Assembly: GCA_943704425.1 (NCBI GenBank)
Contig: CALSCP010001275.1
Location: 1-64,000, forward strand
DNA: 64,000 bases
Source: Ministeria vibrans ATCC 50519
Taxonomy: Eukaryota > Protista > Filasterea
Direction: 5' to 3'
Part shown: one piece after another, positions 10,180 to 39,450 of the stretch
How the letters are laid out: each line of letters begins with the position of its first letter
How positions within the stretch are numbered: position 1 is the stretch's first letter
Program-made: the position numbers and the translations under genes
Notes under the pieces: generated by a model
What the model was told of the DNA's origin: nothing
The model's input: the letters and a program-made list of their open reading frames with translations, nothing else
The model's database searches: none

Positions 10180-13100
10180 TTAGAGGAAGTCAAGCACCAG
10201 TTGATTCACAACCTTGCTCGCCACCTCGCTGGCCACCTGCTTAACGATACCCTCTGACGCAGAGGCACCGGTAGCAACCTCCTCGAACACCCGTGACAGC
10301 GCCGTCACATCACCTGCGTTATGCATTTGACCATTCAGCTGTTGTATCGCCGGCACCAGCTTCGCCCCATTGGTTCGAAAGGCCACACCGTGAGCTGTCA
10401 ACTTGCGTCCCTGCATCGCCGCTTGAAGCGCTCGCGTGGGCGGCATTGGGTCGTCACCACACTCGCCATCCGTCATAAACACCAGCGTCGTGACAAATGC
10501 ACTCCCAGTACCTACCATCAGTTCTTTTGCGTTGTTCAACGGTGGCCCAAACATGGTACCACCACCACCGTACGAAAACGTATTGGGCATGCTCACAAGG
10601 CGCTCACGGGTGTGTGTCACGCGTGCACTCGATCCAAACTGCACAATAGACACAATGTCTTCGCCACCCTGATCGCCCATCCGGCGGTCCTTGAAGCGTT
10701 TCCACGCATCACACAGATCGCCCCAGGAGTTGCTCATCGAGCCAGACTCGTCGAGACAGAACACAAAGTGGTGGCGCACCGTGTCCACCGCATCCGCCGT
10801 GAACAGATTGACCCCAATCATCCGTCGCGCTCCCTTGACCGTCTGAAGCGCCGCCTCAAGTGCGTCCTCCAGATGTGCTGTGGCCGACCGCACACCTCCA
10901 CGCGACTGTCGAATTCGCCCAAAGAACACTTGCACTCCGTGATTCCACTCGGCCTCGCTCCGCACATTGCCCATGTTTGCCAGAAGTTGCATTGCCTCCA
11001 GGCCCCTTCCTTGCTCCCCACTTCTCGTGTCAGGGAAGCGACCTGTGTCGCCATTAAGATCGCCGTGACCTGGCGCGTCCGTTGTCACCAGAAGAAGCTT
11101 GGCCCGCGATCCCCATGAGAGCTTGCGTGCTGCCGCGAGCAGCGCATCGCCCACGTCCTCGGGCAGATCCCCGCCACCGTAGGCCGTCAGACCCTGCACG
11201 CACTGCACAAACGACTTGCCTTCCACCGTTCGGTCGGCCTGCAACACCGTCCCGTCGGGCCCGGTGTGCTCGTACACATGCATGAACGGCACCTCCTCCA
11301 ATACCGCGTCTCGGAAGGCCACAAGGGCACAGCGCATCTCCACCTGCAGCCCCGGCATGCTCTTCTGCACACCCGGCCTGATGCTCGCCACCACATCGCA
11401 AATGTCCTTCTTGATGTGCTCAAGGAAGGGCCGCATGCTGCCACTCACATCCACAACAAAGCACAGATCGACCGTGACCGCACCCGGTGCACTCCCCTGA
11501 ATCAGCGTCGCATTGCGCTCGCCCTCCATCTTGCTCTCGAGCTCCTTGAACACCGACTCCGCCTCGCGCAGCACTTCATTCAGTGCCTCCGCACCCGCAC
11601 GTACACCGTAGCTCTTGGTGGGTGCAACCATTCCGTCCGGCTCACCATCCTCCTGGTCAAACACAGCTCGAAGGGCGGCAGGAAGGGCAGCGGGAATCGC
11701 TGCACGTGCCCACTTCCCGTATGCGCGCTCCACACGAAGGCGATCGTAGCCAACACCGACACCAATCACGTCAACGGCGGACCCACCGTCGTCACCGCGT
11801 GCGCGCCTCAACACTGCCGTGTGCTCCCACGGCGTCAACGAGTAGCCGTCACTCAGCACAAACACATGCTTGGGCCCACGCACGCCGCTACCGGACACAA
11901 GGTCACACGCATACGCAATCGCCTCCGTGTCTCGCGTCACCGTCTCGTCGTCGCCAACGCGCACGTGCTCCATCACAAGCAACTGCGTCACCTCGTCCCA
12001 CGCATCCGACATGCGCTTCAGTACACGCACCTGCCGTCCCGCCTGCACCACTGCCACATTCTCCACACCCACTTGCGCCAGTGTCGCCACAAGGACCAGC
12101 AAGGAGTCAAACGCACACTGTGCCAAGTGACCCTGCATCGACTGCGACGTGTCCACCACAATCGCAACTGCATAGTCACGTCGACCTCCCGTCAGCTTCT
12201 TCGCCCAAATCTTCTTGTAGTTCCAGTCGGTCGAAAACGCCTTGATGAGTCCGGGAAGCGACAGTGCCGTACCCGTCAGCGCAGGCTTGGGCCGCGTAAA
12301 GCGATTGTGCGGATACACAGTCTCCTCAAAGACCGTACTCATCTCGTTCACCTCGCCGATCACACGGCCCATCGCCTGCGCCCACAACTGTTGCACATGC
12401 TGCAGCAAGTGCAACTCACCCTTTGCCGCCCGTCGCTCAATGTGCTCGCGAGCCACGTCGAGCGCTTGCAAGTGCGCCTCTCGCGCCGCAATCTCAGCCT
12501 CGCTTGCTCTCGAGGCAGGCTCCACCGTCTCATCCAAAGCATTTCGACCCACCTTCCACAACGCATCCAAAGAGCCACCGGCACCCTCTTCCTTTGCCTT
12601 CTCCAGCGACAATCCACCCACAGCAACCGCCATCTTGTCCAATCTCTTCTCCTCCTGGGACAGTTGCTCCTGCGTGAGTTGACCAAAGTCGACAAATGCG
12701 CCAAAAGGCGTTGTCCGCTGCGTCTCCGTTGTTGCCGGTCCCTTGCCCATACCCTTGGAGTCTCTCTCTTGCACCTGCTCAATCGTCTTGGTCACACGCT
12801 TCTCCACCAGTGCCAGCAGACATTTCGCCAATTCCTCCGCACGATGCACTTCGCTCACATGAGCAATGTTCTTGATGTTCCCCAGAAATTCGTTCGCGTT
12901 GTCAGGCAACCTGCCATGGCCACACAGAAGCATAAGCAAACTCAGCTCGGCATTACACCTCGTCAGAGGTTGCTTGTAGTTCACAGTTTCAATCTCCTCG
13001 CTCACTCCATCCGTGATCATCACAAACACTCGGCGACGTTCCACCTGTCCCCAGTCTGGCAGTGTCGCCTTCTCCTCGTCAACAATACGCGCCCAGTACT

Positions 13101-16100
13101 CGGCCATGTTGCCCAGCGCCGTCGCTGGCTTCGTTCCCTGATCAAACGTAAACATGTCGAGCATTGTCTGTCCCGTCGCATTAGTAAACGGCTGCGAAAA
13201 CTCCTTGGCCATCTTAGGGTTCTTCTCCGAGCCAAATCGCGCAATGGCAAAGCGCTGCTCCGCACGACGCAACGCCTCCGTCAGCATCACCAGTGCCTCC
13301 CACATTCGATCTCGTTGCACACTCATTGTCCCCGAGTTGTCCACGGCAAGGAACCAGTCGATGGCAACCGGCTGGGGTCGCATGTACAGCACGTGGGCCG
13401 TCGTACGCAACACATCCACCAGCTTGCTCACCATCGCTTCAATGGGTCCCACACGAAGCAGGCGCGAATACGTCCACATGTCCGACTTTTTCATCATATC
13501 GGCCGTCACGTTGCCCTTGAGTACCTTCAGCTTGCCCCCCGATGGTCGCTCGGCGAGCACACGTCCCCGAAAGATAGCGTTCAAATCAGCAGTTTCAAGG
13601 TGACGCCGAAGCATATTGGCGTCTAACTTGACCTGAACTTGTCGCATTTCACCAGTGCCTCCGCCCGTGCCTCCACCACCCAGTGACACTGACGTGTCTT
13701 CAGTCGCTTTCCGCACAAGGGCACGCGCAGCCACCGGCATTTGCTGTTGCTGTTGCGGCGCCTCAGACGGGGTGTGTTGCTGCTGGTCCACAATGCGGAG
13801 ACGTGCAGCACGTTGCGTCGATGAACCGCGCCGACGACGCCCCTCCACACCCTGTGTCCCCATCAGATTCAGATCGCTTGCGGCATTGAAGTCGACCTCA
13901 ATGTCGTCTTCGTGTGCCGGGAACGCAACTTCGCGGCGCCGGTCGCCATCGTGTGCAGCCTCCTCCGAGTCTTCCAGTGCACCTTCGCCGGTCACACGCT
14001 CCAAGAAGTTCAGGTCATCGTCTTCTTGCTCGTCTATCCGCGAAATATCATGTTGCATCGACGAGTTCAGATGGTCCAATGTACTCGCACCACTCTGAGT
14101 GTGCTTGTTCGCGTCCACATCGTTCTTGGTCAGGCGGAATGGAGGCGCCACTTGGGTGTGCTTGCCCACACCAATGGCGAGATCATCAAACGCATGGCGC
14201 ATGTCGCTCGAAAGTAAGTCGCGCGGTACCCGTCCTAACACGCGGCGCAACGGATGGCCCATTGCTCGCACCATCTCACTTGAACGTGTCGAATCTGCTT
14301 CCGCACGCGCACTGCTAGCATCCAGCTGCAACGCAGTCGCTTCGAGGAGACGCAGCATGTCCACACCGTTTCGAAGAAAGTTGAGGCTGTCACGCACGTT
14401 CGTCGCTCCATGACTGGCACTCACACACATAGGCCCAAACGACGATGACCACAATTGCGTAGCTCGCTTCAACAGAGGTAGGCTGTGCGTCAGAGACTTC
14501 ATTCGGCGTTCGTCTCCATTCCCACCATTGCCACCTTTAGCACCAATGAAAATTTCTGCAACTCGATGGAGCTGTCGCATTTCCAACAGTTGCTGCTCCA
14601 TGCGCGAATTCAACCCCCGGTCAGGACCGCCCTGTGCTGCAACCGGCCCAACACCGTCAGCGGCAAAAGTACTGGGTATGGCTGCTGGAGGCATATTCAC
14701 TTCGGCAGGAAACGCATACCACTCACCTTCAGGTCCTTTCCCGGCCCTACTAACCCCTGAACGTCCAGCTTCAGAGCCAACTGGGGCGTCTGTGCAAGTA
14801 AAAGTGCCCTCACTGTGAGCGCCACTTCTGTCACTTGACCCACTTGAGCCACTTGGGCTGCTCGATTCCTTGCTGCTTGCTCCGGTACCACTAGTGCCAG
14901 CGTCGCTAGCACCACTTTCTTCGGTACCACTCAAACTTATCGTAGCGCACAGCTGACCAACACACATTGCAATACCCGCAAGTGCAAGCGCGGCAGGCAA
15001 AGAATTGCTGGCAGCCAAGAACATCGAAACACCCATGGTAATGTTGGCAACCGTCTTGACCTCGGCTGACGCATCCAACTCGGCCAAAAGCGAACCAAGC
15101 AACGCCGTGACGGCCGAAGGATCGTTCTTGGCGGCGTTTGCAAGGTTCTCGCCCGCCGCCGCAACACGCCCTGCCTTGGCAGCCATCACACCAGCTTGAC
15201 CCGGAAGCACATGGGACACACCCTTCAAAACAGTTGGCAGAGCTTCGACAGAATCATCGTTCTGAAGCTGGTCACACATCTGGTCCATCGCGCTCACAGC
15301 GCTGCGCACTCGCCCAATATTAGGCACGCCCGCTGTCTCAGCAATCAGCTGAACTGCCATTAATACCATGTGAGAGTCACCTGTGGCACTCACATCCAAG
15401 AAGTTGCGCACAGCCTGACCCACCGCAAACGCGGTCGGGCTCACACCGGAGGCAAACGCAAGCTCCTCCATTGCGTCCAACACATCTCGTGAGTTTTGTG
15501 ACTTGCTCAACTTTCGAATACTCTTGACCACACGCTTCACTTGCGCTGCCCGTTTGGGCGTAAAGATGACAGAAATATCCATTGCTCCATCAATCGCATC
15601 GATCGTCGAGATGGCATTCGTGCTGGCTCGCTCGGCCACGCCAGCAACACGCTTGAGCGACTGTTTGATGTGTTGCAGAGCAGATGCTTCCCGTTCGGAG
15701 AGCGCCTTCTCCACCAGCCCACTCAGTGAGCGCACGGCACCCGACGTATCCCCCTGCCCTGCAGCCTCAATCAGTACGTTCAAGTGATGCATGACACCTC
15801 CAGCTTTGACGTCGTCCGAGAGCCCGGGCAACAAAGTCAGGGCATGAGTACAGTCCTCATTCGACTGTTGAGCCAGACAACGGAGCTTCTCAGAGTCCTC
15901 CAACAAATTCCTGACCGCACCAATCACCATTTTCCCACTCTCGCCCACTCGATCCTGCGTAACGACCTCCAGTATCGACGACATATCATCGAGCATCTCG
16001 CGGGGAGCCACAGCATCGCCTTTGCGCACCATCTTTCCCACAATTCGCCCAAGCGTCCGACCCGCGTCGCCAGCAAAGCCCAAAACGGCTTCCAGTGCGT

Positions 16101-19100
16101 TTGCAGCTTCTTCACGCGTTGCGTCGCCCGCCAACACGCTGTTGGCCACAGCCAACACGTCGTCAACCAATTTGCAGCCACTGTGGTCCATAGCGGGCAC
16201 ATCCGCATCCGTCGCAATGCGCTCCGCAATCTCATCCAGCGACGGCTCCGCTGGAATGGATTCAACCATCGCCAGAAGTCGTTCGACAACCTTTGCGGTC
16301 CGTTGGCCGTCTCGCCCGCCCACAATGCTCGCTAGATCGCTGCCGGTACGCAGGGCACTGTGAACACTGAAATCAAAGCCTTTGCTCATGTCAATCAGGC
16401 CAGACACAACGTTGGCAGCATTCACAACTGCTTCACGGTGAGTCTCAGGCATGGCATTGGCCGCAAGTTGGCCCATGCTCTCCATCACACCGCCAATATT
16501 GCGAACATCCATTGCCTCCAGAATGGCCACGCCAAGCTCGGCGTCAATCGCACTCACTCCAAACAGCTCCGAGACACGCTGCAGTTGACTTGTTTCCTCC
16601 ATGCTGTTCAGTGACTGCGCGTGCTTCATGAGGTGACTCATCGCCTGCAGACGCAGCGCACCCTCTGGCGGGAGATGTTCACCCGCTAAATGTTCCATCA
16701 GGCTCGCCGCGTTGCTCAACACTTCATCAAGAGGAGGAGAGCCATGCTGACGCACTAGACTGGCGCAGAGCGCGCCCACCTCACGCAAGTGATCGTTCCC
16801 ACTGGCGCGGAGCGTTCCCTCAATGACACGCGCAGCCGCTTCACACGGATCGTCCACGGTCGCCATGGCAAACAGCGCTTCGCGAACACCGACTCGTGCT
16901 CCTCCAGCCACACGATCCCGCAACACACTGCTTAGTGCACTCCACAACGGATCTCGCTCACCGACCACCAAGTCTTCCAACCGCTTCTCCTCCATCATAC
17001 GCGTCAATTGTTTGGCAGCCTCCACAGCATCGCCCTCGACCAGACTCCGCGCGAGCTTGTGCAACGTACCCTCGGGCAACTGCTCCGCCACATCCAGCGC
17101 TACCTCCGACACACTCTCGGCACTTGTGCCACGAGAGGCCATCACCATGCGAGAGGCCAACGTAAGCCAGGGCGCCGTCGCATCCCGCACCGGTTTGGGT
17201 GACGCTGCATTAACCATATTGTGAACGATTTCGGGTGCGGCCGAAGCAACATCGCAGTTGTCTGATTCGTACTCCCCTGCACTGAGCCTCTTCAACTGCG
17301 CCGCCACTGCCGTGCTCTGAAAAAACGTTCGCATGGCGCACTTCACCGCGTTCACACCTTCAACATCAGACTGAGCGTTCATCACATGCTCAAACACCCT
17401 CCTCGTTCCCTCCTCCACCGACACTGTACCATCAACGGAGCCAGACACAAGGTTGGCAAGGCCGTCGTACAGGGGGTGCATTTCGGTCGGTACCTTCACA
17501 CGAAGAAATTGCAACAGCTGTGTCACAAGCGTACTCCCCGAGTGTCCCGCATCAGCGTTGCCGCCGTTCTGCTGCGCCTTCAACCGCTGCAGTATGCCTG
17601 AGATCCCACCACTCACCGGCTGCTCCGTCTTCATTTGTGACTGCAGGCGTTCAATTACCAGTCGGCTCGATTGCGGCGCACGATTCAACGCACAATCTAA
17701 CACGTGTTTATCTGACATGGCACGTGCAGAGGTGAAAAACGCATCCGCTCCTCGGTCTTGGTCATTGGGTCTCGCAGCCACCATGCGTGTCACCTCAGAC
17801 GCCACAGTCGCTGCTGTCGCAAGTGGGAACTCTTGCAGATCGTCGCGTGCAACAAAACCTTGCAGACGAGCGGCATCGAGAGCCGCCAGTTGGTCCCACT
17901 CAAAAGGCAGCTGGCGTGCGGGCTGAAGCTCCTCTTCCGCAGCCGCGACGTCAACAACCCGACCTTGCACGAGAACGGACACAGTGCGAGGAGATAGCTT
18001 CTTTGTCAACGGATCCATGCTATAATCATTCCGGCCGACAAGACGAAGCTTTGTCTCGAAGGATCCCACGTCCATTGTTTGGGCGTTGATCCCAATTGTA
18101 AGCGACACGGTGCGCTTCTCGTTGACATGAAACGAACGAGCACCACCAGCCACTTCCTTCCCGTCGCAATTCACGGTCACAGTATCCATCCCGTCTGTGA
18201 GGACCTCAAGCTCAAGTGTCACATTGCCAACATTGGTGACTGTCATGCCCTTAAACGTCTTGGTGGTCCCGCGACAAATCGTGCCCAGGTTCCAAAAGGC
18301 AATGGGAGACACCGTCATCACTGCACGATGTACCTCCAAGCGCACGTTCACCTGTGGACCACCCGAACCAAGCTGTAGCGGCACGATAGATCGTTTCGTT
18401 GGCGGAGGCAGAGGCACAGGAGCGTAGCGGAGTGTCACGCATACCAAACCGTTCTCGGCAATCGTTGACGGTGCCTCCATCGACCAACCAGAAGGTGGAG
18501 CTTGTAGAGTGAGTGTGCCAGGAGCAGAGCCCTTGTTTCGAACGGTCAGTGTGTGCTCCACGAACGGCATGTGATCCTCATTGACGAGCTTCAGCTTCAT
18601 CTGCGGCGAGCGCTCAACCGTCAGCTGTGCCTCACCCACAAGTACAATGACATTCGTTGTCAAAGACTCCCCTCCGCTCAACCTCACTTTCAAAGTCAGA
18701 TTCTTCTTTGACGACCACCGCGATGTCGGCGCAGTCAATGCGAGAGGAAGAGAACGACGCTGGCCCACAGCGACAACAGCACGGTCTGCCATGGCGAGTG
18801 TGGCCTCTGACGAAGAGTGCGGTAAAATCTCTGCCTGGAAACGCACCTGGACCTTGCCAATGTTCTCAAGTGCAAAGTGCACAACCCTATGTTCTCCCGA
18901 CCGCATCACCACCTGTGGTAACGAGTCAAAGCCCGTCAATCGGCCAGTCTCGGCCACGACTTTCTCACTCACAGAGCCTTCAAAAAGCGCATGAAGACGA
19001 ATTCGAGGCATAATAAACGTGCCGCTGATTGAAAACTCACGCACATGGTCTGCACTGTGAACACCAACCACCAGTGTGCTATTCTTGATGTCCCACGCCC

Positions 19101-28100: not shown

Positions 28101-31100
28101 GTGCTTTGTGTAGTACAGTGGTGGCATTGCAGGCATTCTTCACTCGGTCGTTCAGCTTCACCAAAGTGCGCAGTTCGGCTGGTGTACAACTGGGTTTGAG
28201 GTTGCCAAACACGCGCGACTCGTGTGCCAGATGGCGGAGAATGTCATCGGGATTGCCATTGGACGGCAGTGCATCGGCGGGCATCAGACCATGTAGGTTG
28301 AGCGAGAGCGTGTGAGCAAATGCGCAAGTGTGCTCCGGTGGCGATTTCACAAGCAGCGTGTACGCCAGTTCCAGACACATTTGCTCGACGGCAGTGGTCG
28401 CGGGACGCACGCTGTCCATCCAGGCTTTGTGCCACTCGGGTTCGCTGGCCTCGACCGGAGGCGGGTACACTCGCGCACTGCCACCTTCTTCAAGCCACGC
28501 CGCTCCATTGTCAAGAAACTTGGCAATGCTGGTGTACACAAGCCGTCGCTCCTCCGGCACTGAAAGAGCAGCAGTGTAGCTGTGAATGAGGGCAAGCACA
28601 GCAGCAGCTTCGGGACGTGCCGACTCCGAATGGATGAGGATCTTGGCTGTTTTGGCGGCACGCAGCAGAGCACGACCGGTCACAGTGAAGTTCTCCATGA
28701 GTGTGAGCTTGCGCTCGCTGATCAAAAACTTCACTGTGGCGTGCGTGCGCAACATGAGCGTCCCCAACGCCTCGCCACCGTAGAGCCCACCAAAGGCGGG
28801 ACGGAGAAGCTGCTGAAGATCGTGATTCTTCGCGGTGTTTGCGTCAGTAAGACCTGCATCAATGGGAAGCAAAGTGCAGCGAATCACACGATTAAGTAGG
28901 GCACCCGAGAGCTTTTGAGCGTTGAGTCGCTGCGAGTCGGACGTGCAGAACAGGCGAAAGTCGGGGTGGATGCCCTTGTTAGCGTGCGTGAGAACCTGGC
29001 CATCGGATTTCTCGTACAGGTTCAGAACAGGATTCGCCTCAAATAGTGAGTTGAGACGCTCGAGTACATCGGGGGGCGCCGCGGAGACGCCGTCAAGCAG
29101 TACCCATGACCCCTCGCGCACAGCACGCACAAACTCCGCTTCAACAAACTCAAAGACAATCTGCGCTTTTGTGTCGTCGTCGACGACGCCCTCGGCAAGG
29201 TTTGTTTCGACGCGCTGCTGCAGCTCACACAGGCGCCTGTGTCGGTGGCGAATGCGAGCAAGATGCGTCGCGGAAACGGTCAGCAAAACATTGTGTAAGC
29301 ACTTCAGCTCTGCTACTTGCCCCAGAGCATCCATGGCAGCCCCGAGGACCTCGATGGAGCGTTGTAGGACGGCAATCTCGTACTTGGTGCGATCGAGGGG
29401 CGAGCTGTCCTCGACGTCGCACTTGGTGCAAAGACTTTCGCGACAGTCTTGCAGCTCTTTCACCGCATCAAAAATGCGAGCGGCAGCGTCAAGAATGGCC
29501 ATACGAGGTCCTGCTTCAAGCGACGACGCAATGGAACAGACAAGAAACTCAAGGACCTCGTTGCCCAGCGAGTCCGCGTCGGACATTGAGTTTGCTGTCG
29601 AGAGGCGTGTATATGTCGGCAGCCACTGGCCAATAAGACCGCTTACATCACTCTCATTATTCAGTGGCAACACAATGACCTGGCGTGCAGCGAGACGCGC
29701 CAACTCGAGCACAAGAGCTGTCTTGGCCGAGGCGGTGGGTCCTTCCAGGAGCACGGGTCGGCGCGACTCGGAAGCGGCAGCGAGCAGCGCAAGAGATTCG
29801 ACTGTGTTGGGAGTCATCTCGAGGGGTTTAAGAAGCGCATTGGCAAACGTGTGTACACCACGACGGACAAAAATCGAGCCAATTTGCACAATGTCGTCGC
29901 TGAGGAGGACCTTGGCGCCGCTAGAGGGCATCAGCTTACGAAGCGAGTCGGCCATCGGGAGACGCTTGTTGACAATGGCCGTTGCCTTGCGCTGGTCATC
30001 TTCGCTCAGGAAGCCGCGCACGTAAATGAGCTCGGCAGCCGCATGAAGCGCAATACGGCGAACGTCGGCACTACCATTGCGCGAGGCGGCCCCCGATACA
30101 CCCGAAGACTCGGCAAAATGCTGGTAGTGCGACATTTGGTCGCGCGCGGTGTGTCTCATCAGGTCCTTGATTTTGCTAAGGTCGCGCAAATTGAACTCGT
30201 AGGGACCACCAACGCGCCCAATTTCTCGTTTTTCGACGGCCGCAACAATGTCCTTATGAAGCTCAAAGAGTGCGTCCAGGTCCTCGTCGTCAATGACGGG
30301 ACGCTGAGCACTCTCGTTGATGAATGCTCCAAACAGTTGCTTGACAATCAGCTTCATCTCCTCTTCGTTGTAGGCGCCCAATTGAATGCGAGCAAAAAGT
30401 GAGCGGATGGAGCGGGGCAGCTGGCCACGGCCGCCACCGGTCGATGATGGATTCATGGTGGCAAAGAGAGTAACACCCGTCGGAAGCTCAAGAGCACCAT
30501 AGCCCGGCAGCACGACGGTGCGCGAGGCACGCGCGCCACGGTCCAGAAGAGGTAGGATGCCATCCAGAACGTCGGGAGGCGCAAGATTGAGCTCGTCAAA
30601 GAGAACCCAGTGCCCTTGCTTCAGTGCCTTGACGAGCTTGCCGTCGCGCCAGCGGAACACACGAGAACCATCACTTGCGGTGACTGGCATGATACTGCCA
30701 ACGAGTTGGGACAAGGTGGTGCTGCCGCTAAAGTTGATACGCTCACAAGTGGCTCCAAAGAGTTTTGCTGTCTCCTCCACCACGCGAGTCTTACCAATGC
30801 CAGGCGGGCCCTCCAAGAGCAGGGGTGCATCGCCCAGGATAGCAATGCCAATGCGCGAGAGGTTGGCAATAAAGGTGGGTGTGGTGCAAACAGAGAGACG
30901 GGCATTGGCCAACTGCGTGGCGCGTGTGTCGACATCCCAGGCGCCCGCATGGTCGTCGGGAAGAATGGGATTCTGCGAGGAAAAGAGGGGGACCTGTTCC
31001 TCATCGAATCGTGAGTCGTACTTGTCGTTAGCGGCGGCGTCATCGTCACCGCCACCACCACCACCGCCGGGTATGGTAAAGTTATCTGGGAGTGTTGGGC

Positions 31101-34100
31101 GAACCACAATGCCCGAGTAATGGAGACGGAAAAAGCCGTTGCGGAGGACCTGAACAGGGTTGTTGAGGTCGTCGATAGAAGTGTCAGAACCAGCTTTAGG
31201 AGGTCTGAAGATGCGCAGGGAGGCAGGGGGTGGCGGTGTAGTCTCTTCATGCTCGTAGAGCTTTTTCCACCATTCGTCAATGACGCGCTCCTGCTCGTCA
31301 ATCGTGAACTCATCAAAGAAGAAGGACTTGAGTGCAATGAGCACACGATCAGCAAGCGGGACGTGTGGTGGGCAGGCGACGATGAAGTCGGCGGAGCGGA
31401 ACAGCTGATGAATGTCTGGGGAGCGACCAAGTGCAGGCTTCTGCGCACGGAGTGAGCGACGCAGACCGTTTGGGTCGAATAGTTGATGCAGTGACTCGTT
31501 GAGCTCTTCGGCGGGAGGTGTCGGGCGCAAACGACGGTTTAAATCGGCGCGGACAAGTTTCTTGACGTCTGGCTCGCCGTACTCGGTCGTAGAGATAACG
31601 GTGAAACGCGAGAGAGTCGCTGGACTCACTTTGATTGGCTGTGCGGCGGAGGCACGATGAATGGAGGCAAATACCTGAAAGCCAGGAAGAATATGCAAAC
31701 CTGTGGCGTCACTGGTGATGTTCTCGGTGACGTTCAGCGACGGATCTGGCTCGAGCAGAGAATTGAGGCGTTCCGTGACAGCCTGGCTTGGCGAGTCAAA
31801 GTCTTCAAGGAACAGCAACTGCGCCTTTTGTGCCGCAACCGTCACAGGTCCTGCGCGGAAGCGAAACGACGGTTGTGTCGCATCACGGCAGCTGCCAATC
31901 GCCTCGCGCGACCACTCAAGCTCCTCTAACAGGCTACAGAGCACAGCATCTTGGGGAAGCAGCTGTTGCAAGTTGCGCAAGTGGCTGCACACCTTGCTGA
32001 TGTACTGAACAAGCTCGTCGGTGGCCGGGATGGGCGTGGATTCATCGGCAGTGTCCTTTGCGTTCGGCAGCAAGGCGTCTTGGAAGAGTTGCGAAGTCAT
32101 GATAGACGGTCCATCTGACGCGTTGCTGTCGTTGTCGCCTTCCGAATCGTACAGCAACGAAGAGTGAGCAGCTTCAACCGACGACAAAGGCACTGCAGCT
32201 GCGTGGTTGTCGTCGTCGCTGTCTGACTCGTAGCGAGGAGGAGCAGGGGATAGGACAATCTTTTGGTCGTTGTCCGACTCGCAGTGGGTGGGGGCGGCGG
32301 CGGCGGAGGAATCGGCAGCGGGGGCAGTCACGTCTTGGTCGCTGTCTGATTCGTAGCGGGCAAACAGATCAGCGGAGGAATCGACAGCGGGGGTAGCCAC
32401 GTCTTCGTCGCTGTCTGAGTTGTAGCGGGCAGGGGGAGCAGTCATGGGATCAGTCGTGGAAGTAGGGAAAGAATTGACAGCAGATATAGCCACGTCTTCG
32501 TCGCTGTCTGATTCGTAGCGGGCAGGGGGAGCAGTCATGGGATCAGTCGTGGAAGTAGGGAAAGAATTGACAGCAGATGTAGCCACGTCTTCGTCGCTAT
32601 CCGAGTCGTAGCGAGCAGGGAGAGGCGTAGTCTGGGGTGGACTCTCTCGAGTGACGAACACGTTGACGTCGTCATCTTCGGATTCATCTTCATCGTCCGT
32701 GTCAATGATGTCAACCACCTTGGTGCCCACACGATTTTCCGGCAGCAAAAAGTCATCGGAGGCGCGCAGATCGTCCATGTTGATGCCACTGCCATAGTGA
32801 GCTTCGGGTACGATTGCGTCGACAAGAAGCGCCGCTGCGTCCATAGCAATGCTCTCCTCTTCCTGTTCTCGTTCCATGGCACGCATCCGCTCTTGTTTTT
32901 TCACGTCCTTTGCGCGCTGATCCATGGCATATAAGAAGGTAGTGGCCGTGGTCTCCAACAGACGTGTGCTCTCATTGGCATGTTGTCGAGCAATGGTAGT
33001 TGACTCGCTATTGAGCGCCCCTGTTGTGCGTTCGACCAATAGATGCACGCGGTCGCACGCGGCCGACGCAAGAGGGTGCACTCCCTTGACAATGTCACGG
33101 AAGGCAATTGGACGAATCTCGCCCACCAGGTCACTTGTCTCCGTGTCAGGCGTGAGAAAAAGCTTGACCAGTTGCTCCGAGGCACCGTAGAGCTCACAGA
33201 AGGCGCGAACCAATGTAGTCTTGAATGACGTAGGACCAATGATGAGAACAGGTTCACGAAAGTGCACCGCAAGACACAGCTGCGCCAGGGACTCGCGAAA
33301 GTTGGCAGGGAGATCGCCAAAGTGAGCCAGAAGCGTTGATTGACGCAGGCGCTCATTCACAGTGCCGGTGACGGGTAGGTGTGCATCGAGTTGAATGGAT
33401 TGGCTACTGAGACTGCAGTGCAGCGTTTCGTCGTCAAAAACCAACGAGTGTAGCGAGCCGTTTGAAAGAAGATGGTCAATAGTGTCCCAACCGTCGACCT
33501 TCTTAAACGCGTTCAATAGGCACTTGTAGCCCGACGAGTCGCGAGTGTAGCGACCCGACAGAAGCGCAAATCCAACAACATGCCAGGGGGCGTCGGTAAA
33601 AGCGGCCTTGCGACGAATCCACTTCATCAACTCGCGCATTGTAATCCGCTGGGGTGTGGCACGCAGGTTGTGGTACAGTTGAGCAAGACGATCGGCGTCC
33701 TCGTCGGCAATGCGGACGTTGACACGGGCGTCGTGTCGGCGTTGAATGATGTCCGCCAGCTCGTCACGAGGAAAGTCTGAAATTTGCACTTCAAGAAAGC
33801 GGTTGCGCAGCGCAATTGGCAAACGGTGGCGGTTGGCGTAAGACGCGTCGTTTTGGGTGGCAAAGAAGCGGAAGTTGGGGTGGACAAAGACCGTCTCGTT
33901 GGTAGTGGGCACAACAAGCGTGCGGTGACCCTCGAGCAGCGGAAAGAGGACGTTGAGGACGTCGGGCGGAGCCAGGTTGAGCTCGTCGGCCAAAAACCAG
34001 TGACCCTTCGAGAGGGCTGTCAACAATTTGCCTTCCTGGTAGATGAAGGAGCCGCCAACAGGCATCCACGATCCAAAGAGGTCCTGCATCGTGATCGTGT

Positions 34101-37100
34101 CGGTGAAGTTGACGCGCTCAAGGCACGTGCCGCGTTCCAAGGCGAGAGCCTCAATGAGCGACGTCTTGCCCACAGCAGCGGGACCTTCAAGTAGAACAGC
34201 TGCGCCACTCAGGACACAGGCAAAGACACTTTCGGCTTGGGCAAGACGCGACCTGGTAAGAATGTGCTGACCTTGCCCGAGCGAAGTGTCTGGCAGGAGG
34301 GTCACACCGTCGGGTGAGCCACCATCACGACCGGAGGAAGGGAAGCACTGGCCAATAGCGCGGTGTAGCTGCGTTGTCTCTTGGACCTGCGATGGCGTCT
34401 CAGTCTTCATTTGCGAGTAGAATACCGTGTTGAAGGCAGACCAGAGGCACGCAACAAAGGTGCTGTCTGTGTTTGTGGAGCAAAGACGTGCCGACGTGTC
34501 AATAAGGCGCACGTAGTTGCGCATCGTGATGCTCGCTCCAGCTTTAGCGTGCAAGTTGTCCGAGAAAAAGGCATGCAAGCACTTGATGACCTTTTCGAGC
34601 AGCGCTCGATCTTGAGCCGGTAAATCCTCCGGCATGAGAGTTGTCGCAATGTCCATGATCTCTTGGTGGAAGACATTTGCGTCGTTGGGGTCGCGAGAGC
34701 GTTGTGGAGCGCTCATAAAGATGCTCGTGAATCGATTTGCAAGCGCGGGAGACAGCTCGTGACCAGAGGAGCCTACACCTGCCATGGCCGAGGCGCTTTT
34801 GTCGATGGGTGTCATAGTGGCAAAAAAAGCGTATCCACGGGCCTCCTCAAGAGCCTGATCATCGCCACGCTCAATAAGACGCAGCATCGTTGGCTGTTCG
34901 AGCAGTGGGTTGAGACGCTCGATGACGGTGCCCTCGGCCTGTGACAGATTGTCTAGCAACAGCCACCGGCCGTCTTCGTAGGCGACGTGCACGGGCCCAC
35001 GCTGCCACTCAATCTTGGCGTGGTCCGAGCCGGCGGCCGGCGCGAGCTGTCCGATGAGCTGCGAAGGCTCTGTCTCGGGTGTGAGCGAGTAGTGCTGCAG
35101 ACCGGGTGAGAGAAGCCAAGCAAGAGCACGGACAAGGCAACTCTTGCCAGCACCCTCATCACCGACGATGAGCACAGGCTGGGGAGTGCGCAGTGCATGA
35201 ATCACCAGCTGACACACAGCACGGGCGGTCTGTGTAAACACAAACGGTGTGTCGGGTTGTTCCTTGTCCATGATGGCGCGCTGGAGAACGCGTGTGTCGC
35301 GGGGCAGGTCAAAAAACTTGCAAAAGATCTCCGCCACAGAGTTCTGGGCCGTTATGTGCCGGAATCGGGACGCATACAGCGAAGCACCAAGCTTTGCCAA
35401 CGGTAACGAGTTGGTCGAATCAGCGAGACATGCGGCGTGCGTTGCAGAGGAGGCCTCGTGCAGCCAACGCACCACCCACTCGTCTGTTGGCATGTAGAGA
35501 CCGTGGCGCTCCACAAAATTGTCCGTTGAGACCATCTCGATGACACCTGCGTGACACGAGCGAATCGATTCAAGCCAGTCGTCATTGTCGAGAAGCTTGC
35601 GCGCGACACCCTCGGTGTGGCTAATCTTGAAGTTCTTTGCTCCGTCGATGCGGTCGAGGACACACGTCTTGATTGGGCGTGCCGTTGGATCCATCTTCGG
35701 GTCGCCGACTGAGAAGGTGGTGCGTGTCAGCTGGAGCGGAATGTGCGTTCGCTTTTTCGTAGGGTGCAGGATGGGTTGGAGGAGTTGAGGCGCACTCCAC
35801 TTGAACGACTTGTGCCAGGCACTGCACAGGAGGAGACCAAGAGCGGAGCGACCCTCGCCACGGAATCGAGCCCCATAGATGGCCCAAGCCTGAGCGGCAA
35901 GTGTCTTGTGCAACAGCGGGTCATCAAGTATCTCTGGCGCGTTGTTGGCCGCCTCGACAACGTGCGCAGTCCACTTGAGCAGCTCACGAATAGACACATC
36001 GGCGTACGCGGCGCGCTCAACAAAGGGCTCGGTCTTGCTGCGCAGCTTGTTGGCAATGGCGGCGTGTAGGCGTTGCATGATGCGGGCGAGATGCAAAGCA
36101 CGCTCTTTGGGCAACTTGTCCGACTCAAGTTTGCTGGCAACGATGGAAGTCCACTCATCGGACTGAAAGAAAAGAAGAAGTAACGTATAAAAGAATACAA
36201 TTTCAAGGGAATAAGGAGTAATAATAATAATAATAAAATAAAATAATATAATACCGGTAGTTCCTCGAAGATGATGGGTGTGAAGCGATCGAGGAAGGAG
36301 CGTGAGAGAGGTTCGCGAGCGCCCTTGAAAAAGCCAGCGTTGGGGTTCTGTGCGGCAAAAAGACGGAAGTTGGGGTGCATCGTGACGGTCTTGAAAGGCT
36401 GCTGAGCGTCGGACGAATCGTAGTAGTTGAGATCGCCAGTGTCGAGGGCAGCCTCAATGCAGTGTAAAACGTCGTCGGGAGCAAGGTTGCACTCGTCGAG
36501 GAGGAGAAAGTCGCCGTTTTCAAAGGCAAGCGTAAAGTCACTCTTGCTAAACTGGAAGGTGGGACCGGAAGACGACGCGCTAGCCTTAAGCTCAAGACGG
36601 CCTATGAGGTCGTCGATGGTCATGCGAGAGCTCATATTGGTGCGGCGCATAGTCATGTTACGCTCGTCGGCGGCCGCCATGATGATTCGTGACTTGCCCA
36701 CACCGGTGGGGCCCTCGAGGAGAACGGGACCGCTCCGATCGACAGCGTCAAGAATCTTGTCGAGATTGTGACGCGTCGTTGGGGTGAGGACAAGACCCTT
36801 GTTGTCGACAGAGGGTGTCTGGGTGCTCGTGGACGTCGCGTTGAGATCATCTTTGGTGAGAATGTCAGAGAGGCACCGGCGAAGTAGGGGTCCCGCGTCG
36901 ATTTTCATGAGGGTGGCATGCTTCAAGACCGCCGCGAGGGCACGGAGGTCCTTTTCATTGACAGTATGGCGATGGCGACGCCTTGAGGCGTTGGTCGCGG
37001 ACGACGTGTGATCTGCATCGCTCAGAAACGTGTTGCTGCCACTGATGGAGGAGGAGGGGGATAAGGAAGGCCCACTGTCGAAAACGGACACTTCGACATC

Positions 37101-39218
37101 GCGAGGCTGATTGCTCATGTCACCAAGAGACTCAATGAGCACGGCCGTATTGTCGTCGTTAAAGGAGAGAGTGATGGCGAGGAGACGAGCAGAGGCCGTG
37201 ACAACCGTAGGCTGCGAGTCTGCAATGTGCGTGAGCAGAACACGGGTGTGTGGAAGAAGCGCGACACAAAGTGGCTCGCGCAGGGAGGCGTCGGCGAGGA
37301 TCGAGGCGACGCTGTCAAGCAGGGCACCGAGCGACTCTTGTGGCGAGTGGAGCACGACGGAAGTAACAAAGTGCTCAAGAGAGCGCAGGTGAGCGTCGGC
37401 CTTGTGTGCAAGGGCAAGAGCGAGGGCGTGGAAGTTGCCGCGACGCTGAATCCATTTCGATTTGACCAAGGGAGACGAGCCTACAACGTACGAAGCGAAA
37501 TCGTTGATGATGGTTGATGGCGTGGAAATGCTCGGGGAGGCCACTAGAGTAGCAAGGATAGCAATGGAAGCATCGCACTCAAGAGAGACGTTTGAAAACA
37601 ACAGGGGGATGACGGCGTCGTTCTCGAGGATGGCGGTTGCGATCGGAGCAGGTGCACTAGTGATTAACTGGGCGAGGCAGTCAAGGAGCTCGCGTGGGGG
37701 CACAGCGGAGCGTAGCAGCACAGTGAGAATGTGTGGCACAGCCGAGGCAGCGTGGGAGGGTGCGCGGGCCAGCGTAAGTACCGCGCTGTGCGTGCACGCC
37801 TCAACAAGGGTACGGTTGGCAAGCGTTTCGGAAGCAGCCGGAACACTGGCAGCCCAGGTGGCAATAGAGAGGAGGAACGAGGGTTCTGGATGTTCACCGA
37901 GGTACTTGAGGCACACGATAGCATCGTCAACAAGAGTGCCAGGGTCGAATTCGTCCTGGGTTTCAGCAGAGGGGTCTTGACTGCCGTGGAGAAGATCCAG
38001 AAGGGTACGAGGGGCGATTGGAATGGAAGACACCTTGGGGTTGGCGTCAAGAAGGGCACGACAGAGGCGCACAAGCGTCGCTTGAGTGGTCGGAGAAATG
38101 TCGGCGCACCAAGTGCTAAGGGACTCCAAAGTCTTGGTGGCAAACAAAGGCAGCTTGGCAAAGCGTGCAATGGCAACGTGAGTGACGCACCGACAGATGC
38201 TATCTGTGTGTGTGTCGGACTCGAGCGCCAGGCCAATGAGCGAGTCGAGGAACAGTTCCGGGAAGTTGTAATGTGCCGTGAGATCGTCGTCACACTCTAG
38301 TGGCTCGAGCCACGCAACGAGGGCAAGAAACAGGCCCTTGTGACAAGTGTCGACGACGACACGAATGAGTTGGCGGAAACGGGCGCAGATGTGGTCTGGA
38401 TGGTGCGTAAACAAAGCCGAAGCGTGTATCGTAGTGAGACGGCGGAGGATTTTTGACATCTCGGCAGCTGGGAGCGCTGCTGCCACATCCGAATTGTGCT
38501 GCAAGATGTGCTGGAGGAGCTCTCGAGCGCGCTCACTACGCGCACGGACGCCCTGACCACCATCGTGGAGCTGTGTGCGACTGAGTGGCTCGTCGGAGCA
38601 GCGGTCGTGCCACAGGACACGCTTGACGTGAACGTCGGCAGGAATCGAGACCTCATTGGCAAAATCGCGGTGCGTATCACTTGTATCGGCTCTGGCGATA
38701 GTGAGTGGCGCGAAAAAACGGAACAGAATGCACTTGAGATATTCCGTCCCAAGCGTTGCAACTTGGTCCAAGACATCGTTGTCGAGGAGAAGGCTGACGG
38801 CGGCGTCGACGTGTCGCGAGCGAACATTCGGCTGGTCGAGGAGCTTGACGACGCGCTTGAGGACCTTCTTCTCGGGCGCGTACTTGAAGTCGTAGAGAAG
38901 ACCACGGTCAATGAGCGCAGCGATTTTGACTTGATCGTAGCTCTCGTGTTGACGCAAGCGAACGACAAGAGCATTGAGAAGACACACGAGCTGTCCAACG
39001 TAGTCGGAGTTGGTACTCTCGGTGATGAGGTGGTACAGGAGCGACGGCGAGCTTGCGTCGTCGGCGAGCAGCTTTGTCTTGAACAGCGCTTTGGCGATGC
39101 GACGCGTTGTGTCGAGATCTGCGCTGAGAACAAAGTCGATGGCACTCTCTAGCGAGACGCTCGAAGCATGGTTGGACGCCATCCGACGCATGGCCGTGAT
39201 TACTCTGTCTTTATCCAT
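10180..39218 (-). CDS. Giant midasin/Rea1-like protein, ~9648 aa: six AAA+ modules, linker, Ig-like domains, four vWA/MIDAS domains; exons 39218-36255 and 36162-10180
   Basis: ORFs 35727..39335 and 10180..36114 join in frame through a 92-nt GT-AG intron (36163-36254; FEELP|SDEWTSIV). Midasin-type AAA motifs (PVLLEGP.G.GK, DE.NLAP, HPNFR.FA.QN, L.NRF) recur six times. DxSxS/T vWA motifs: VDNSGTM, VDTSQSM, VDVSGSM, LDESGSM. Confidence 0.9.
32393..32620. repeat. 93-bp coding tandem repeat (~2.4 copies) within the AAA4 insert
   Basis: TAGCCACGTCTTCGTCGCT recurs at 32394, 32487 and 32580. It encodes the 31-aa unit ARYxSDSDEDVAxSAVNSFPTSTTDPMTAPP. Confidence 0.92.
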
Positions 39219-39221
39219 GTC

Positions 39222-39224
<3 letters not shown>

Positions 39225-39310
<86 letters not shown>
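39225..39310. repeat. (AG)n microsatellite, probably intronic on the minus strand
   Basis: Perfect AG run lying between a GTAAGT donor (39360) and a CAG acceptor (~39223) on the minus strand. Confidence 0.95.
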
Positions 39311-39314
<4 letters not shown>

Positions 39315-39360
39315 AGAGAAGATAGTACAAGTCACAGAAACAACAACAAACGTTACTTAC

Positions 39361-39450
39361 GACAATGAGAGGCACCGCAGGCGGCCGAAACGCTGCCATC
39401 ACATTAGTCAAGCCAATCACTAACGTAAATAACACCAGGCAAGTCTTCAT
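39361..39450 (-). CDS. Orphan 30-codon signal-peptide exon resembling the N-terminus of glutaminase A (GtaA)-type proteins
   Basis: MKTCLVLFTLVIGLTNVMAAFRPPAVPLIV followed by a consensus GTAAGT donor. RPPAVPL is the N-terminal motif I recall for the GtaA family. No continuing exon of that family is present in the window. Confidence 0.5.

What the first reader, a model, noticed from the sequence alone, without database searches (positions are those of the whole stretch)
10180..39218. ~1-MDa midasin-derived machine: six-AAA ring, Ig-like domains and four vWA domains in one 9,648-aa chain
Seen: one intron fuses the 1202-aa and 8644-aa ORFs into 988+8660 codons. Domain order is helical N-terminus, AAA1-6 (~36800-28600), a ~3000-aa linker with coiled coils, Ig-like repeats (~19740-17950), helical repeats, a low-complexity spacer, then four vWA domains (~13360-10180). 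Established: Rea1/MDN1 is ~4,900-5,600 aa, has a single C-terminal MIDAS and a long D/E tail, and has no Ig-like array; MoxR-type AAA+ ATPases work with vWA adaptors. Inference: this is probably not the housekeeping ribosome-maturation midasin but a neofunctionalised paralog, a multi-substrate remodeller or possibly a defence-type giant ATPase conceptually like RNF213. It is the best candidate here for an undescribed system.
Basis: partly seen in the sequence, partly recalled or inferred. Interest (0 to 1): 0.92.

Follow-up and report, generated by a model that had tools for sequence, protein, structure and literature searches.

The report
Giant second midasin-like ATPase gene
This is a real, expressed 9,648-codon gene for a ~1-MDa six-AAA+ motor protein with four metal-site (vWA) binding domains; it is not the cell's ribosome-maturation midasin but a member of a widespread, apparently undescribed sister family of giant proteins.

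Summary
Two minus-strand ORFs are joined by a 92-nt GT..AG intron (36254..36163) into 988 + 8,660 codons. An RNA-derived contig lacks exactly that intron. The product (~1.06 MDa) has six AAA_5 modules, a ~2,900-aa orphan linker, about five ASH/PapD-type Ig domains, a Ser/Gly spacer and four vWA domains, each with a DxSxS/T MIDAS motif.

The main interpretation is supported.
- The same genome has a separate canonical MDN1: 5,679 aa, midasin lids, D/E-rich tract, one C-terminal vWA.
- In a tree, the window gene falls in a distinct clan of 27 giant proteins (5,000-8,000 aa). These come from rotifers, Hydractinia, green algae, a haptophyte, a chlorarachniophyte and metagenomes. The clan is split from 15 MDN1s with SH-aLRT 100.
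- The genome also holds a second giant paralog (28-59% identity), spread over three contigs.
- The family has its own conserved ring pattern: AAA1/3/5 have Walker A plus DE, AAA2/6 have D-N/G, and AAA4 has lost its P-loop. MDN1 has AAA2-5 active.

Nothing supports a defence or RNF213-like role. I found no paper describing the family. The best reading is an ATP-driven remodeller that pulls on ligands held by its MIDAS sites; the substrate is unknown. The scan separately noted a similar giant midasin-like gene elsewhere in this genome, probably this paralog.

The parts
36255..39218 (-). Exon 1 CDS: 988 codons from the ATG. About 810 aa of N-terminal region with no detectable family, then the AAA1 alpha/beta domain (aa 815-988; window 36776..36255; Walker A GPTGVGKS, Walker B LLLDE).
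   Evidence: The paralog starts at an equivalent position. No homologs of the N-terminal part alone were found.
36163..36254 (-). The only intron: 92 nt, GT..AG, about 14-25% GC, with an (ATT)n-like repeat.
   Evidence: Sequence. It is removed exactly in RNA contig X1 record 1 and retained in DNA contigs of X7. It is the only AT-rich stretch in the gene.
10180..36162 (-). Exon 2: 8,660 codons plus the stop. One uninterrupted 26-kb reading frame.
34663..35226 (-). AAA2 (exon-2 aa 313-500). Walker A is GDEGAGKS. Walker B is LLLDN: the catalytic Glu is replaced by Asn, and this is conserved across the family.
33733..34248 (-). AAA3 (aa 639-810). GPAAVGKT plus FLADE. This is the best-conserved module and matches Rea1/Mdn1 AAA3 and NorQ/CbbQ.
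31483..33300 (-). AAA4 (aa about 955-1560), degenerate. The Walker A-like motif is GPTSFKT at aa 976, and the Walker B position reads LLFLED. The module is split by an insert of about 380 aa that carries five RYxSDSDxD acidic repeats (32613..32209).
   Evidence: family consensus; profile G4 matches MDN1 AAA4 at 130 bits.
30328..30873 (-). AAA5 (aa 1764-1945). GPPGIGKT plus VLFDE.
28873..29805 (-). AAA6 (aa 2120-2430). The P-loop is GPTASAKT. An insert of about 180 aa follows, then Walker B WVLLDG, which has no catalytic Glu.
19756..28485 (-). Post-ring 'linker' (aa 2560-5469). It has no Pfam, PDB or Atlas match and is only faintly colinear with family members. No profile similarity to the MDN1 linker was found.
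17953..19755 (-). Array of about five ASH/PapD-type Ig-like beta-sandwich domains (aa 5470-6070).
14758..17952 (-). Region of unknown fold (aa 6071-7050), ending in an Ala/Gly-rich hydrophobic stretch (about 7040-7075) and a Ser/Gly-rich low-complexity spacer (about 7078-7135).
   Evidence: The hydrophobic stretch is marginal and is not conserved in relatives.
12793..13395 (-). vWA1 (aa 7590-7790), MIDAS motif DNSGT. It corresponds to the single C-terminal vWA of family members P0001, P0002 and P0009. It matches the MDN1 MIDAS domain weakly.
11593..12195 (-). vWA2 (aa 7990-8190), MIDAS motif DTSQS.
10843..11490 (-). vWA3 (aa 8225-8440), MIDAS motif DVSGS. Its best Pfam match is VWA_4, with an integrin-beta-like hit.
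10183..10785 (-). vWA4 (aa 8460-8660), MIDAS motif DESGS. C-terminal end of the protein.

Best explanation
The locus is one expressed two-exon gene for a protein of about 1.06 MDa. It belongs to a distinct, eukaryote-wide but patchily retained sister family of midasin (MDN1/Rea1).

Shown:
- A single chain carries six MoxR/dynein-class AAA+ modules.
- Modules 3-6 are colinear with midasin AAA3-6.
- The family keeps a fixed pattern of three hydrolysis-competent modules (AAA1, 3, 5) interleaved with three non-hydrolytic ones. AAA2 and AAA6 bind-only (Walker B D-N or D-G). AAA4 has no P-loop.
- The C-terminus holds four vWA domains with intact MIDAS motifs. The first is the counterpart of midasin's MIDAS domain.
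- The genome also keeps a normal MDN1.

Inferred:
- The protein works like midasin and like MoxR-vWA pairs.
- The vWA MIDAS sites capture acidic side chains of protein ligands through a bound metal.
- ATP turnover in AAA1/3/5 remodels the long linker, so that force is applied to those ligands and they are extracted or rearranged in a large assembly.
- Four MIDAS sites would allow multivalent or sequential capture.
- The ASH Ig array and the Ser/Gly spacer would act as docking and tether elements in place of midasin's D/E-rich tether.
- The substrate is unknown and is probably not the pre-60S particle, since MDN1 is present for that.
For: Gene model and splice.

Domains.

Separate MDN1 on C2736: six intact P-loops, AAA_lid_7 x3 plus AAA_lid_5, a tract of up to 56% D/E at aa 4700-5350, and a single vWA.

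Family:
- The top 25 database hits score 600-1173 bits, against about 470 bits for true midasins.
- The ring and tail align colinearly with these hits.
- In a tree of AAA5-AAA6 (42 rows, 762 columns), giants and MDN1 are split with SH-aLRT 100 on both sides, and the window gene is sister to the own-genome paralog.
- The closest solved structures are Mdn1/Rea1 (E about 1e-121), then NorQ/CbbQ; no dynein or RNF213 appears.

Ring:
- Module profiles match positionally: G3 to M3 at 200 bits, G4 to M4 at 130, G5 to M5 at 206.
- The Walker pattern is conserved across 14 family members and differs from MDN1.

Tail and selection:
- MIDAS motifs are conserved in the paralog and in the family.
- The ring and tail are the best-conserved parts between the two paralogs (46-59% and 52%, against 28-32% in the linker). 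That fits a motor-plus-binding-head logic.

Expression: the spliced contig in X1, and three contigs at 99% identity or more in a marine polyA metatranscriptome, X5.

Background: vWA domains as metal-dependent substrate-binding partners of MoxR/midasin-clade AAA+ proteins (PMC3495828); the Mdn1 MIDAS domain binds its substrates under tension (PMC8837202, title and abstract).
Against: - No functional data exist and no partner or substrate has been identified.
- The linker shows no detectable similarity to the Rea1 linker (hhalign probability 0.05%), and the Atlas gave nothing. Transfer of the linker-swing mechanism is therefore by analogy only.
- AF2 of the tail failed (pLDDT 33), so the vWA folds rest on Pfam hits and motifs. 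vWA1 is below the Pfam cut-off (21.3 against 23.8 bits).
- vWA1 has DxSxT rather than DxSxS.
- Only the first 6.6 kb of the transcript is shown.
- The 5' flank is unreliable because the contig is probably misjoined at the (CT)n tract. An additional 5' exon cannot be excluded.
- The tree is unrooted and was built with the quick method.
Confidence: 0.6

Rival explanations
1. It is a cilium-, centrosome- or microtubule-associated remodeller or scaffold. On this reading the ASH Ig array targets it to axonemal or centrosomal structures, and the motor acts on those assemblies. This is a specific version of the best explanation that names a substrate class.
For: - The Ig array's best structural matches are ASH-domain proteins of the ciliary central apparatus (9ijj, 7sqc, 7som) and CEP192 (7ptb). 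Pfam also gives Cep192_D3.
- The genome encodes 10 or more dynein heavy-chain loci, so the organism is flagellate.
- All named organisms carrying the family have ciliated or flagellated stages (the biology is from general knowledge).
Against: - ASH/PapD-like folds also occur in trafficking and other contexts.
- The Ig array is detectably conserved only in the paralog and in P0001/P0002.
- Many ciliated lineages, vertebrates among them, gave no family member among the best 120 hits listed.
- No localisation data exist.
Confidence: 0.15
2. It is a defence or immune-type giant ATPase, conceptually like RNF213 or STAND/MoxR-vWA conflict systems. The multiple vWA heads would sense or trap invaders.
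For: - Patchy distribution, within-genome duplication and a fast-evolving middle region.
- A vWA array as a multivalent binder.
- bpMoxR and nSTAND3 P-loop-level Pfam hits.
Against: - PADLOC gave only short P-loop matches.
- No effector, E3, nuclease, TIR or death-like domain was found anywhere.
- The ring and tail motifs are strictly conserved over very deep divergences, which looks more like a housekeeping machine.
- RNF213 was absent from the PDB sequence hits.
Confidence: 0.07
3. It is simply this organism's divergent, expanded MDN1 ortholog and acts in 60S ribosome maturation.
For: - Midasin is the best PDB match.
- AAA_lid_7 is present.
- vWA1 is weakly similar to the MDN1 MIDAS domain.
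- Some relatives are auto-named 'Midasin'.
Against: - A canonical 5,679-aa MDN1 with all hallmarks exists on C2736.
- The tree separates the two groups with full support.
- The window gene has no D/E-rich tract.
- The catalytic pattern of the ring differs.
Confidence: 0.03
4. It is a gene-model or assembly artefact: several genes or a chimeric contig read as one frame.
For: - The assembly misjoins contigs at microsatellites.
- Only 6.6 kb of the transcript is shown.
Against: - A 25,983-nt frame without a stop cannot arise by chance.
- There is no microsatellite or AT-rich break inside exon 2.
- Single proteins of 7,400-8,000 aa from other organisms are colinear from AAA1 to the vWA tail.
- The paralog has the same order of parts.
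Confidence: 0.03

Closest known systems
Midasin (MDN1 / Rea1)
   Same: - Six tandem AAA_5-class modules in one chain.
- A midasin-type lid (AAA_lid_7).
- Modules 3-6 are positionally equivalent.
- AAA6 is split by an insert.
- A C-terminal MIDAS-type vWA (vWA1).
- Best PDB match: 6or5 and 6i26 at E about 1e-121.
   Different: - A separate clan in the tree, with the genome holding its own MDN1.
- 9,648 aa against about 4,900-5,700 aa.
- AAA1/3/5 are active rather than AAA2-5, and the AAA4 P-loop is lost.
- An N-terminal region of about 810 aa.
- No D/E-rich tether.
- The linker is not detectably homologous.
- An ASH Ig array is present.
- Four vWA domains instead of one.
- AAA_lid_5 was not detected.
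Bacterial MoxR-class AAA+ ATPases with vWA partners (NorQ/NorD, CbbQ/CbbO, RavA/ViaA)
   Same: - Same AAA+ clade: AAA3 hits NorQ (E 1.7e-13) and CbbQ.
- Same logic of a motor paired with a MIDAS-containing vWA adaptor (PMC3495828).
   Different: - Those are homohexamers of proteins of about 270-500 aa with a separate vWA protein.
- Here six diverged modules and four vWA domains are fused in one eukaryotic megaprotein.
Dynein heavy chain
   Same: - A six-AAA+ ring in one polypeptide with a mix of active and inactive modules.
- The same deep origin from MoxR, according to PMC3495828.
   Different: - No dynein hit in the PDB sequence search.
- In dynein the linker is N-terminal to the ring, and there is a stalk with a microtubule-binding domain and no vWA (general knowledge).
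- The genome's dyneins are separate loci.
RNF213 and VWA8
   Same: - Giant or multi-AAA proteins of the dynein/midasin-like class.
- VWA8 also ends in a vWA domain (general knowledge).
   Different: - RNF213 was not recovered by any search, and no RING or E3 module is present.
- VWA8 is about 1,900 aa with fewer AAA modules.
- A separate multi-AAA_5 gene on C1726 may be this genome's VWA8-like protein. It was not among the own-genome hits to the AAA5-6 query, whereas MDN1 was.

Membership tests
Midasin (MDN1/Rea1) orthologs | Groups with MDN1 of other eukaryotes and is the genome's midasin. | tested here: not met
   A tree splits 27 giants from 15 MDN1s, including the genome's own MDN1, with SH-aLRT 100 on both sides. 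There is a bit-score gap of 600 bits or more against about 470. A separate MDN1 lies at G000:C2736:42573-59609.
Midasin (MDN1/Rea1) orthologs | Six tandem AAA_5-class modules forming the ring. | tested here: met
   AAA_5 hits for modules 1, 2, 3, 5 and 6. AAA4 was found through the family consensus, the GPTSFKT motif, and a profile match to MDN1 AAA4 at 130 bits.
Midasin (MDN1/Rea1) orthologs | Midasin-specific lid domains (PF17867 AAA_lid_7, PF17865 AAA_lid_5). | tested here: inconclusive
   AAA_lid_7 scores 43.9 bits (cut-off 22.7) at exon-2 aa 1958-2066. AAA_lid_5 was not found. The genome's own MDN1 has both: 156.6 and 75.3 bits.
Midasin (MDN1/Rea1) orthologs | Catalytic pattern: Walker B DE in AAA2-5, with AAA1 and AAA6 non-hydrolytic (as read from the own-genome MDN1). 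| tested here: not met
   The window gene has AAA1 DE, AAA2 DN, AAA3 DE, AAA4 without a P-loop, AAA5 DE and AAA6 DG. The own MDN1 has AAA1 DG, AAA2-5 DE and AAA6 DG.
Midasin (MDN1/Rea1) orthologs | D/E-rich unstructured tether before the MIDAS domain. | tested here: not met
   No 100-aa window reaches 30% D+E in either exon product. The own MDN1 reaches 56% over aa 4700-5350.
Midasin (MDN1/Rea1) orthologs | Rea1-type helical linker after the ring. | tested here: inconclusive
   hhalign of the family's post-ring 1,500 aa against the MDN1 linker alignment gave probability 0.05%. The alignments were rough, and no usable structure model could be made.
Midasin (MDN1/Rea1) orthologs | Single C-terminal MIDAS (vWA) domain. 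| tested here: not met
   There are four vWA domains with MIDAS motifs. vWA1 and vWA2 each match MDN1 MIDAS domains weakly (E about 3e-9). vWA1 corresponds to the single terminal vWA of P0001, P0002 and P0009.
Giant midasin-like family (P0001-P0025; unnamed) | Colinear ring with the family-specific Walker pattern: GxxGCGKS plus D-N in AAA2, GPAAVGKT in AAA3, GPTSxK in AAA4, GPPGIGKT in AAA5. | tested here: met
Giant midasin-like family (P0001-P0025; unnamed) | C-terminal vWA with a DNSG[ST] MIDAS motif; in one subgroup, further vWA domains downstream. | tested here: met
   The motif is found in P0001, P0002, P0009, P0024, P0010, P0013, P0014 and P0019. P0019 has all four vWA motifs.
RNF213-like / defence ATPases | E3 or another effector module, or similarity to known defence proteins. 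| tested here: not met
   No such Pfam domain was found. PADLOC gave only P-loop matches of 27 bits or less.

The most novel reading that the evidence does not exclude
Besides dynein and midasin, eukaryotes have a third, ancient single-chain six-AAA+ machine. It has a fixed active/inactive alternation in the ring (a pseudo-trimer of dimers) and one to four MIDAS heads. It acts on a large non-ribosomal assembly, perhaps ciliary or centrosomal. It has been lost many times and has never been studied.
Probability: 0.45. Interest if true: 0.8.

Novelty: new variant of a known kind. Interest (0 to 1): 0.66.

Why it matters
Only two single-chain six-AAA+ lineages descended from MoxR are discussed in the literature I could search: dynein and midasin (PMC3495828). 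A third, conserved family would be a natural experiment in how such rings are wired and how force is passed to substrates. Its features are a different catalytic layout, a different linker, an Ig array and up to four MIDAS heads.

The family occurs in tractable organisms such as Hydractinia, rotifers and green algae, so function, localisation and structure could be tested directly. It also matters for annotation, because relatives are currently auto-labelled 'midasin' or 'MoxR-like ATPase'. That hides the fact that these genomes have a true MDN1 as well as a second, different machine.

Tried and rejected
- AF2 of the whole vWA tail with a 2-sequence alignment gave mean pLDDT 32.8 and was unusable. 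No fold search was run on it.
- Aligning window fragments with full-length family proteins, to get a deeper MSA for the linker, failed. MAFFT spread the fragment over other AAA modules, so alignments A2 and A3 were not used for folding. A2's family rows were reused only to cut module profiles.
- The ESM Atlas gave no usable hit on linker aa 2560-4560.
- The search of protein representatives on the Ig region gave only 2 weak hits among 1.84 billion representatives.
- The search for homologous proteins found nothing in the allowed length ranges with exon 1 alone or with vWA2-4 alone. These blanks say little.
- phmmer of the last 1,560 aa against PDB gave nothing.
- A transmembrane hairpin at about aa 7040-7075 was rejected. 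Its hydropathy is marginal (1.96), it is Ala/Gly-rich, and it is not conserved in the paralog or the family.
- The 'signal-peptide exon' at 39450..39361 as part of this gene was rejected. RNA joins it to an exon on contig C1413, and it would be out of frame.
- One MAFFT --auto run timed out and was redone with a faster setting.
The AAA1 lid, which spans the junction, was therefore not analysed as one piece.

Full report
GENE MODEL

Reading the overlap shows a coding end at ...CTACCG (36255). It is followed by GTATTA and an AT-rich, (ATT)n-like stretch ending in TTTCAG (36163). Coding then resumes in the frame of the long ORF.

- Exon 1: 39218..36255, 988 codons from the first ATG.
- Intron: 92 nt.
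- Exon 2: 36162..10183, 8,660 codons, followed by a stop.

The splice is backed by data. In run X1, a 6,612-nt contig (record 1) lies on 39216..36259 and continues at 36163..33600, with three letters between the two pieces. That is exactly the exon-exon junction. Contigs of the DNA-like run X7 instead run into the intron. A marine polyA metatranscriptome (X5) holds three short contigs of the gene at 99% identity or more.

Apart from the intron, no stretch of the gene is AT-rich enough to be a hidden in-frame intron. Only the first 6.6 kb of the transcript is documented. All searches were done exon by exon, by reference. The mass (about 1.057 MDa) is the sum of the two parts.

DOMAINS

Pfam finds AAA_5 once in exon 1 and five times in the first 2,500 aa of exon 2. 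It also finds the midasin lid AAA_lid_7 and vWA families in the last 1,100 aa.

Motif reading gives the following ring:
- AAA1: GPTGVGKS / LLLDE.
- AAA2: GDEGAGKS / LLLDN.
- AAA3: GPAAVGKT / FLADE.
- AAA4: a shortened GPTSFKT and LLFLED, split by an insert of about 380 aa with five RYxSDSDxD repeats.
- AAA5: GPPGIGKT / VLFDE.
- AAA6: GPTASAKT, then an insert of about 180 aa, then WVLLDG.

The four C-terminal vWA domains are each recovered when scanned alone (vWA1 is just below the cut-off). Each carries a MIDAS motif followed by the downstream Thr and Asp: DNSGT at 7608, DTSQS at 8004, DVSGS at 8238, DESGS at 8471.

The Ig-like region (aa 5470-6070) gives a sub-threshold Cep192_D3 hit. With a four-sequence alignment, AF2 returns an all-beta model. 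pLDDT is about 80 for the first two domains, lower for the next two, and poor for the last. Foldseek's best matches are ASH-domain proteins of the ciliary central apparatus (9ijj, 7sqc, 7som) and the CEP192 SPD-2 domain (7ptb). So this is an array of about five ASH/PapD-type sandwiches.

A Ser/Gly/Thr/Pro-rich spacer lies around aa 7051-7150. There is no D/E-rich tract anywhere.

The N-terminal 810 aa, the 2,900-aa linker and aa 6071-7050 gave no signal in Pfam, PDB or the Atlas. Their helical nature is therefore unverified. No conserved transmembrane segment exists.

NOT THE HOUSEKEEPING MIDASIN

The same 29.7-Mb assembly has, on contig C2736, one 5,679-aa ORF with these features:
- six intact P-loops;
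- three AAA_lid_7 domains and one AAA_lid_5;
- a tract of up to 56% D/E at aa 4700-5350;
- one C-terminal vWA.

That is a textbook MDN1.

A search with the ring of the window gene returns a top group of 25 proteins of 5,000-8,000 aa at 600-1,173 bits. True midasins follow only at about 470 bits. The named sources of the top group are:
- Rotaria, Adineta and Hydractinia;
- Mesostigma and Bryopsis;
- Prymnesium and a chlorarachniophyte;
- several metagenomes.

The ring aligns colinearly with these proteins. The vWA tail aligns with the C-termini of P0010, P0011, P0013, P0014 and P0019.

I built a maximum-likelihood tree of the AAA5-AAA6 region (42 rows, 762 columns, LG+C20). It splits 27 giants from 15 MDN1s, including the genome's own, with SH-aLRT 100 on both sides.

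The closest solved structures are Mdn1 and Rea1 (E about 1e-121), then NorQ and CbbQ. No dynein or RNF213 appears.

A SECOND GIANT IN THE SAME GENOME

Own-genome searches with the tail, the ring and the Ig array find a paralog (28-59% identity) with the same order of parts:
- C1380:3308-11984: N-terminus to mid-AAA5, with several introns.
- C597:47111-28869: one 6,152-aa frame, from AAA5 to vWA1.
- C2411:7060-3906: vWA1 to the end.

The junctions are introns full of (AAT)n or (CT)n, where the contigs end or are misjoined. The ring and tail are the best-conserved parts between the two copies; the linker is the least conserved. This is probably the 'giant midasin-like protein with a re-built tail' that the scan noted elsewhere in this genome.

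WHAT DEFINES THE FAMILY

Across 14 members the Walker pattern is fixed:
- AAA1, AAA3 and AAA5 have Walker A plus DE.
- AAA2 and AAA6 have a P-loop but D-N (D-G in the window's AAA6).
- AAA4 has only GPTSxK.

The own MDN1 shows DG in AAA1 and AAA6, and DE in AAA2-5.

I compared profiles of the six family modules with modules cut from 13 MDN1s. G3 matches M3 at 200 bits, G4 matches M4 at 130, and G5 matches M5 at 206. G6 matches M2 and M6 equally (126 and 123). G1 and G2 look like M5/M3 and M4. So at least modules 3-5, and probably 6, are positionally equivalent to midasin's, which argues for a shared six-module ancestor.

The MIDAS motif of vWA1 (DNSG[ST]) is present in all members checked. Motifs for vWA2-4 recur in P0010, P0011, P0013, P0014 and P0019. 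P0019 has all four. vWA1 corresponds to the single terminal vWA of P0001, P0002 and P0009. Both vWA1 and vWA2 match MDN1 MIDAS domains weakly (E about 3e-9).

By contrast, the post-ring 1,500 aa show no profile similarity to the MDN1 linker.

MECHANISM

Shown: a single chain with a midasin-like ring, three hydrolysis-competent and three degenerate modules in alternation, and four intact metal-site vWA domains.

Inferred, by analogy with midasin and MoxR-vWA pairs (PMC3495828; PMC8837202):
- The MIDAS sites hold protein ligands.
- ATP turnover in AAA1/3/5 remodels the linker, so that the ligands are pulled out of, or rearranged in, a large assembly.
- The ASH array and the Ser/Gly spacer replace midasin's acidic tether as docking and tether elements.

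The substrate is unknown. The ASH similarity and the flagellate nature of the organism (10 or more dynein heavy-chain loci) make a ciliary or centrosomal target a reasonable but untested guess.

A defence role has no support. PADLOC gives only P-loop noise, and no effector domain is present.

NOVELTY

Five full-text searches found no description of a second midasin-like family. The one evolutionary account I read names only dynein and midasin as six-AAA descendants of MoxR. Relatives exist in public databases but only as 'unnamed', 'hypothetical', 'MoxR-like ATPase' or auto-named 'Midasin'.

I therefore rate the finding as a new variant of a known kind. It is a distinct family within the midasin/dynein class, not a new principle.

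CAVEATS

- The tree is unrooted and was built with the quick method.
- The family's age is not established.
- The tail fold prediction failed.
- The linker is a blank.
- The 5' flank of the gene is unreliable, because contig C1275 is probably collapsed at the (CT)n tract at 39217-39322. The start codon is nevertheless consistent with the paralog's N-terminus.
- The organism is not identified. Other first-stage notes (unchecked) point to an opisthokont protist.

Noticed in passing
window 39217-39450 and L010 (G000:C1413): The 90-nt signal-peptide-like exon at 39450..39361 (-) has a GTAAGT donor. In RNA contig X1 record 2 it is spliced not to the giant gene but to an exon at C1413:3090 (-), which is preceded there by (CT)n...TTTAG. 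Contig C1275 is therefore probably collapsed or misjoined at the (CT)n tract at 39217-39322. The secretory exon belongs to another gene.
   Followed up: yes
G000:C1380:3098-11984, C597:28869-47221, C2411:3906-7060 (L004-L009): A second giant paralog (28-59% identity, same domain order) is spread over three contigs. These contigs end or are misjoined inside introns made of (AAT)n or (CT)n microsatellites. This is a systematic weakness of the assembly.
   Followed up: partly
G000:C2736:42573-59609 (L001-L003): The genome's canonical MDN1 is a single 5,679-codon ORF without introns. It has a D/E-rich tract at aa 4700-5350 and one C-terminal vWA.
   Followed up: yes
window 32209-32613: Five copies of an acidic RYxSDSDxD repeat lie inside the AAA4 insert. 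They sit in units of about 23-41 aa and look like casein-kinase-type phospho-sites. The insert is variable in length across the family.
   Followed up: partly
G000:C1726:20794-23456 (L011): Another multi-AAA_5 gene has at least 3-4 AAA_5 modules (248 bits) in ORFs of 730 and 209 aa. It is possibly a VWA8-like protein. It was not characterised further.
   Followed up: partly
G000 contigs C1831, C1488, C25, C1679, C883, C1793, C216, C1168, C298, C2648, C2014: At least ten dynein heavy-chain loci give DHC_N2 hits, so the organism is flagellate. Several of the AAA_5 hits in the genome belong to these loci.
   Followed up: no
Read-laying run X5, window 33851-34039, 34928-35158, 36297-36515: Contigs of a marine polyA metatranscriptome match the gene at 99% identity or more. 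The organism, or a very close strain, is therefore present and expressing this gene in the sea.
   Followed up: no
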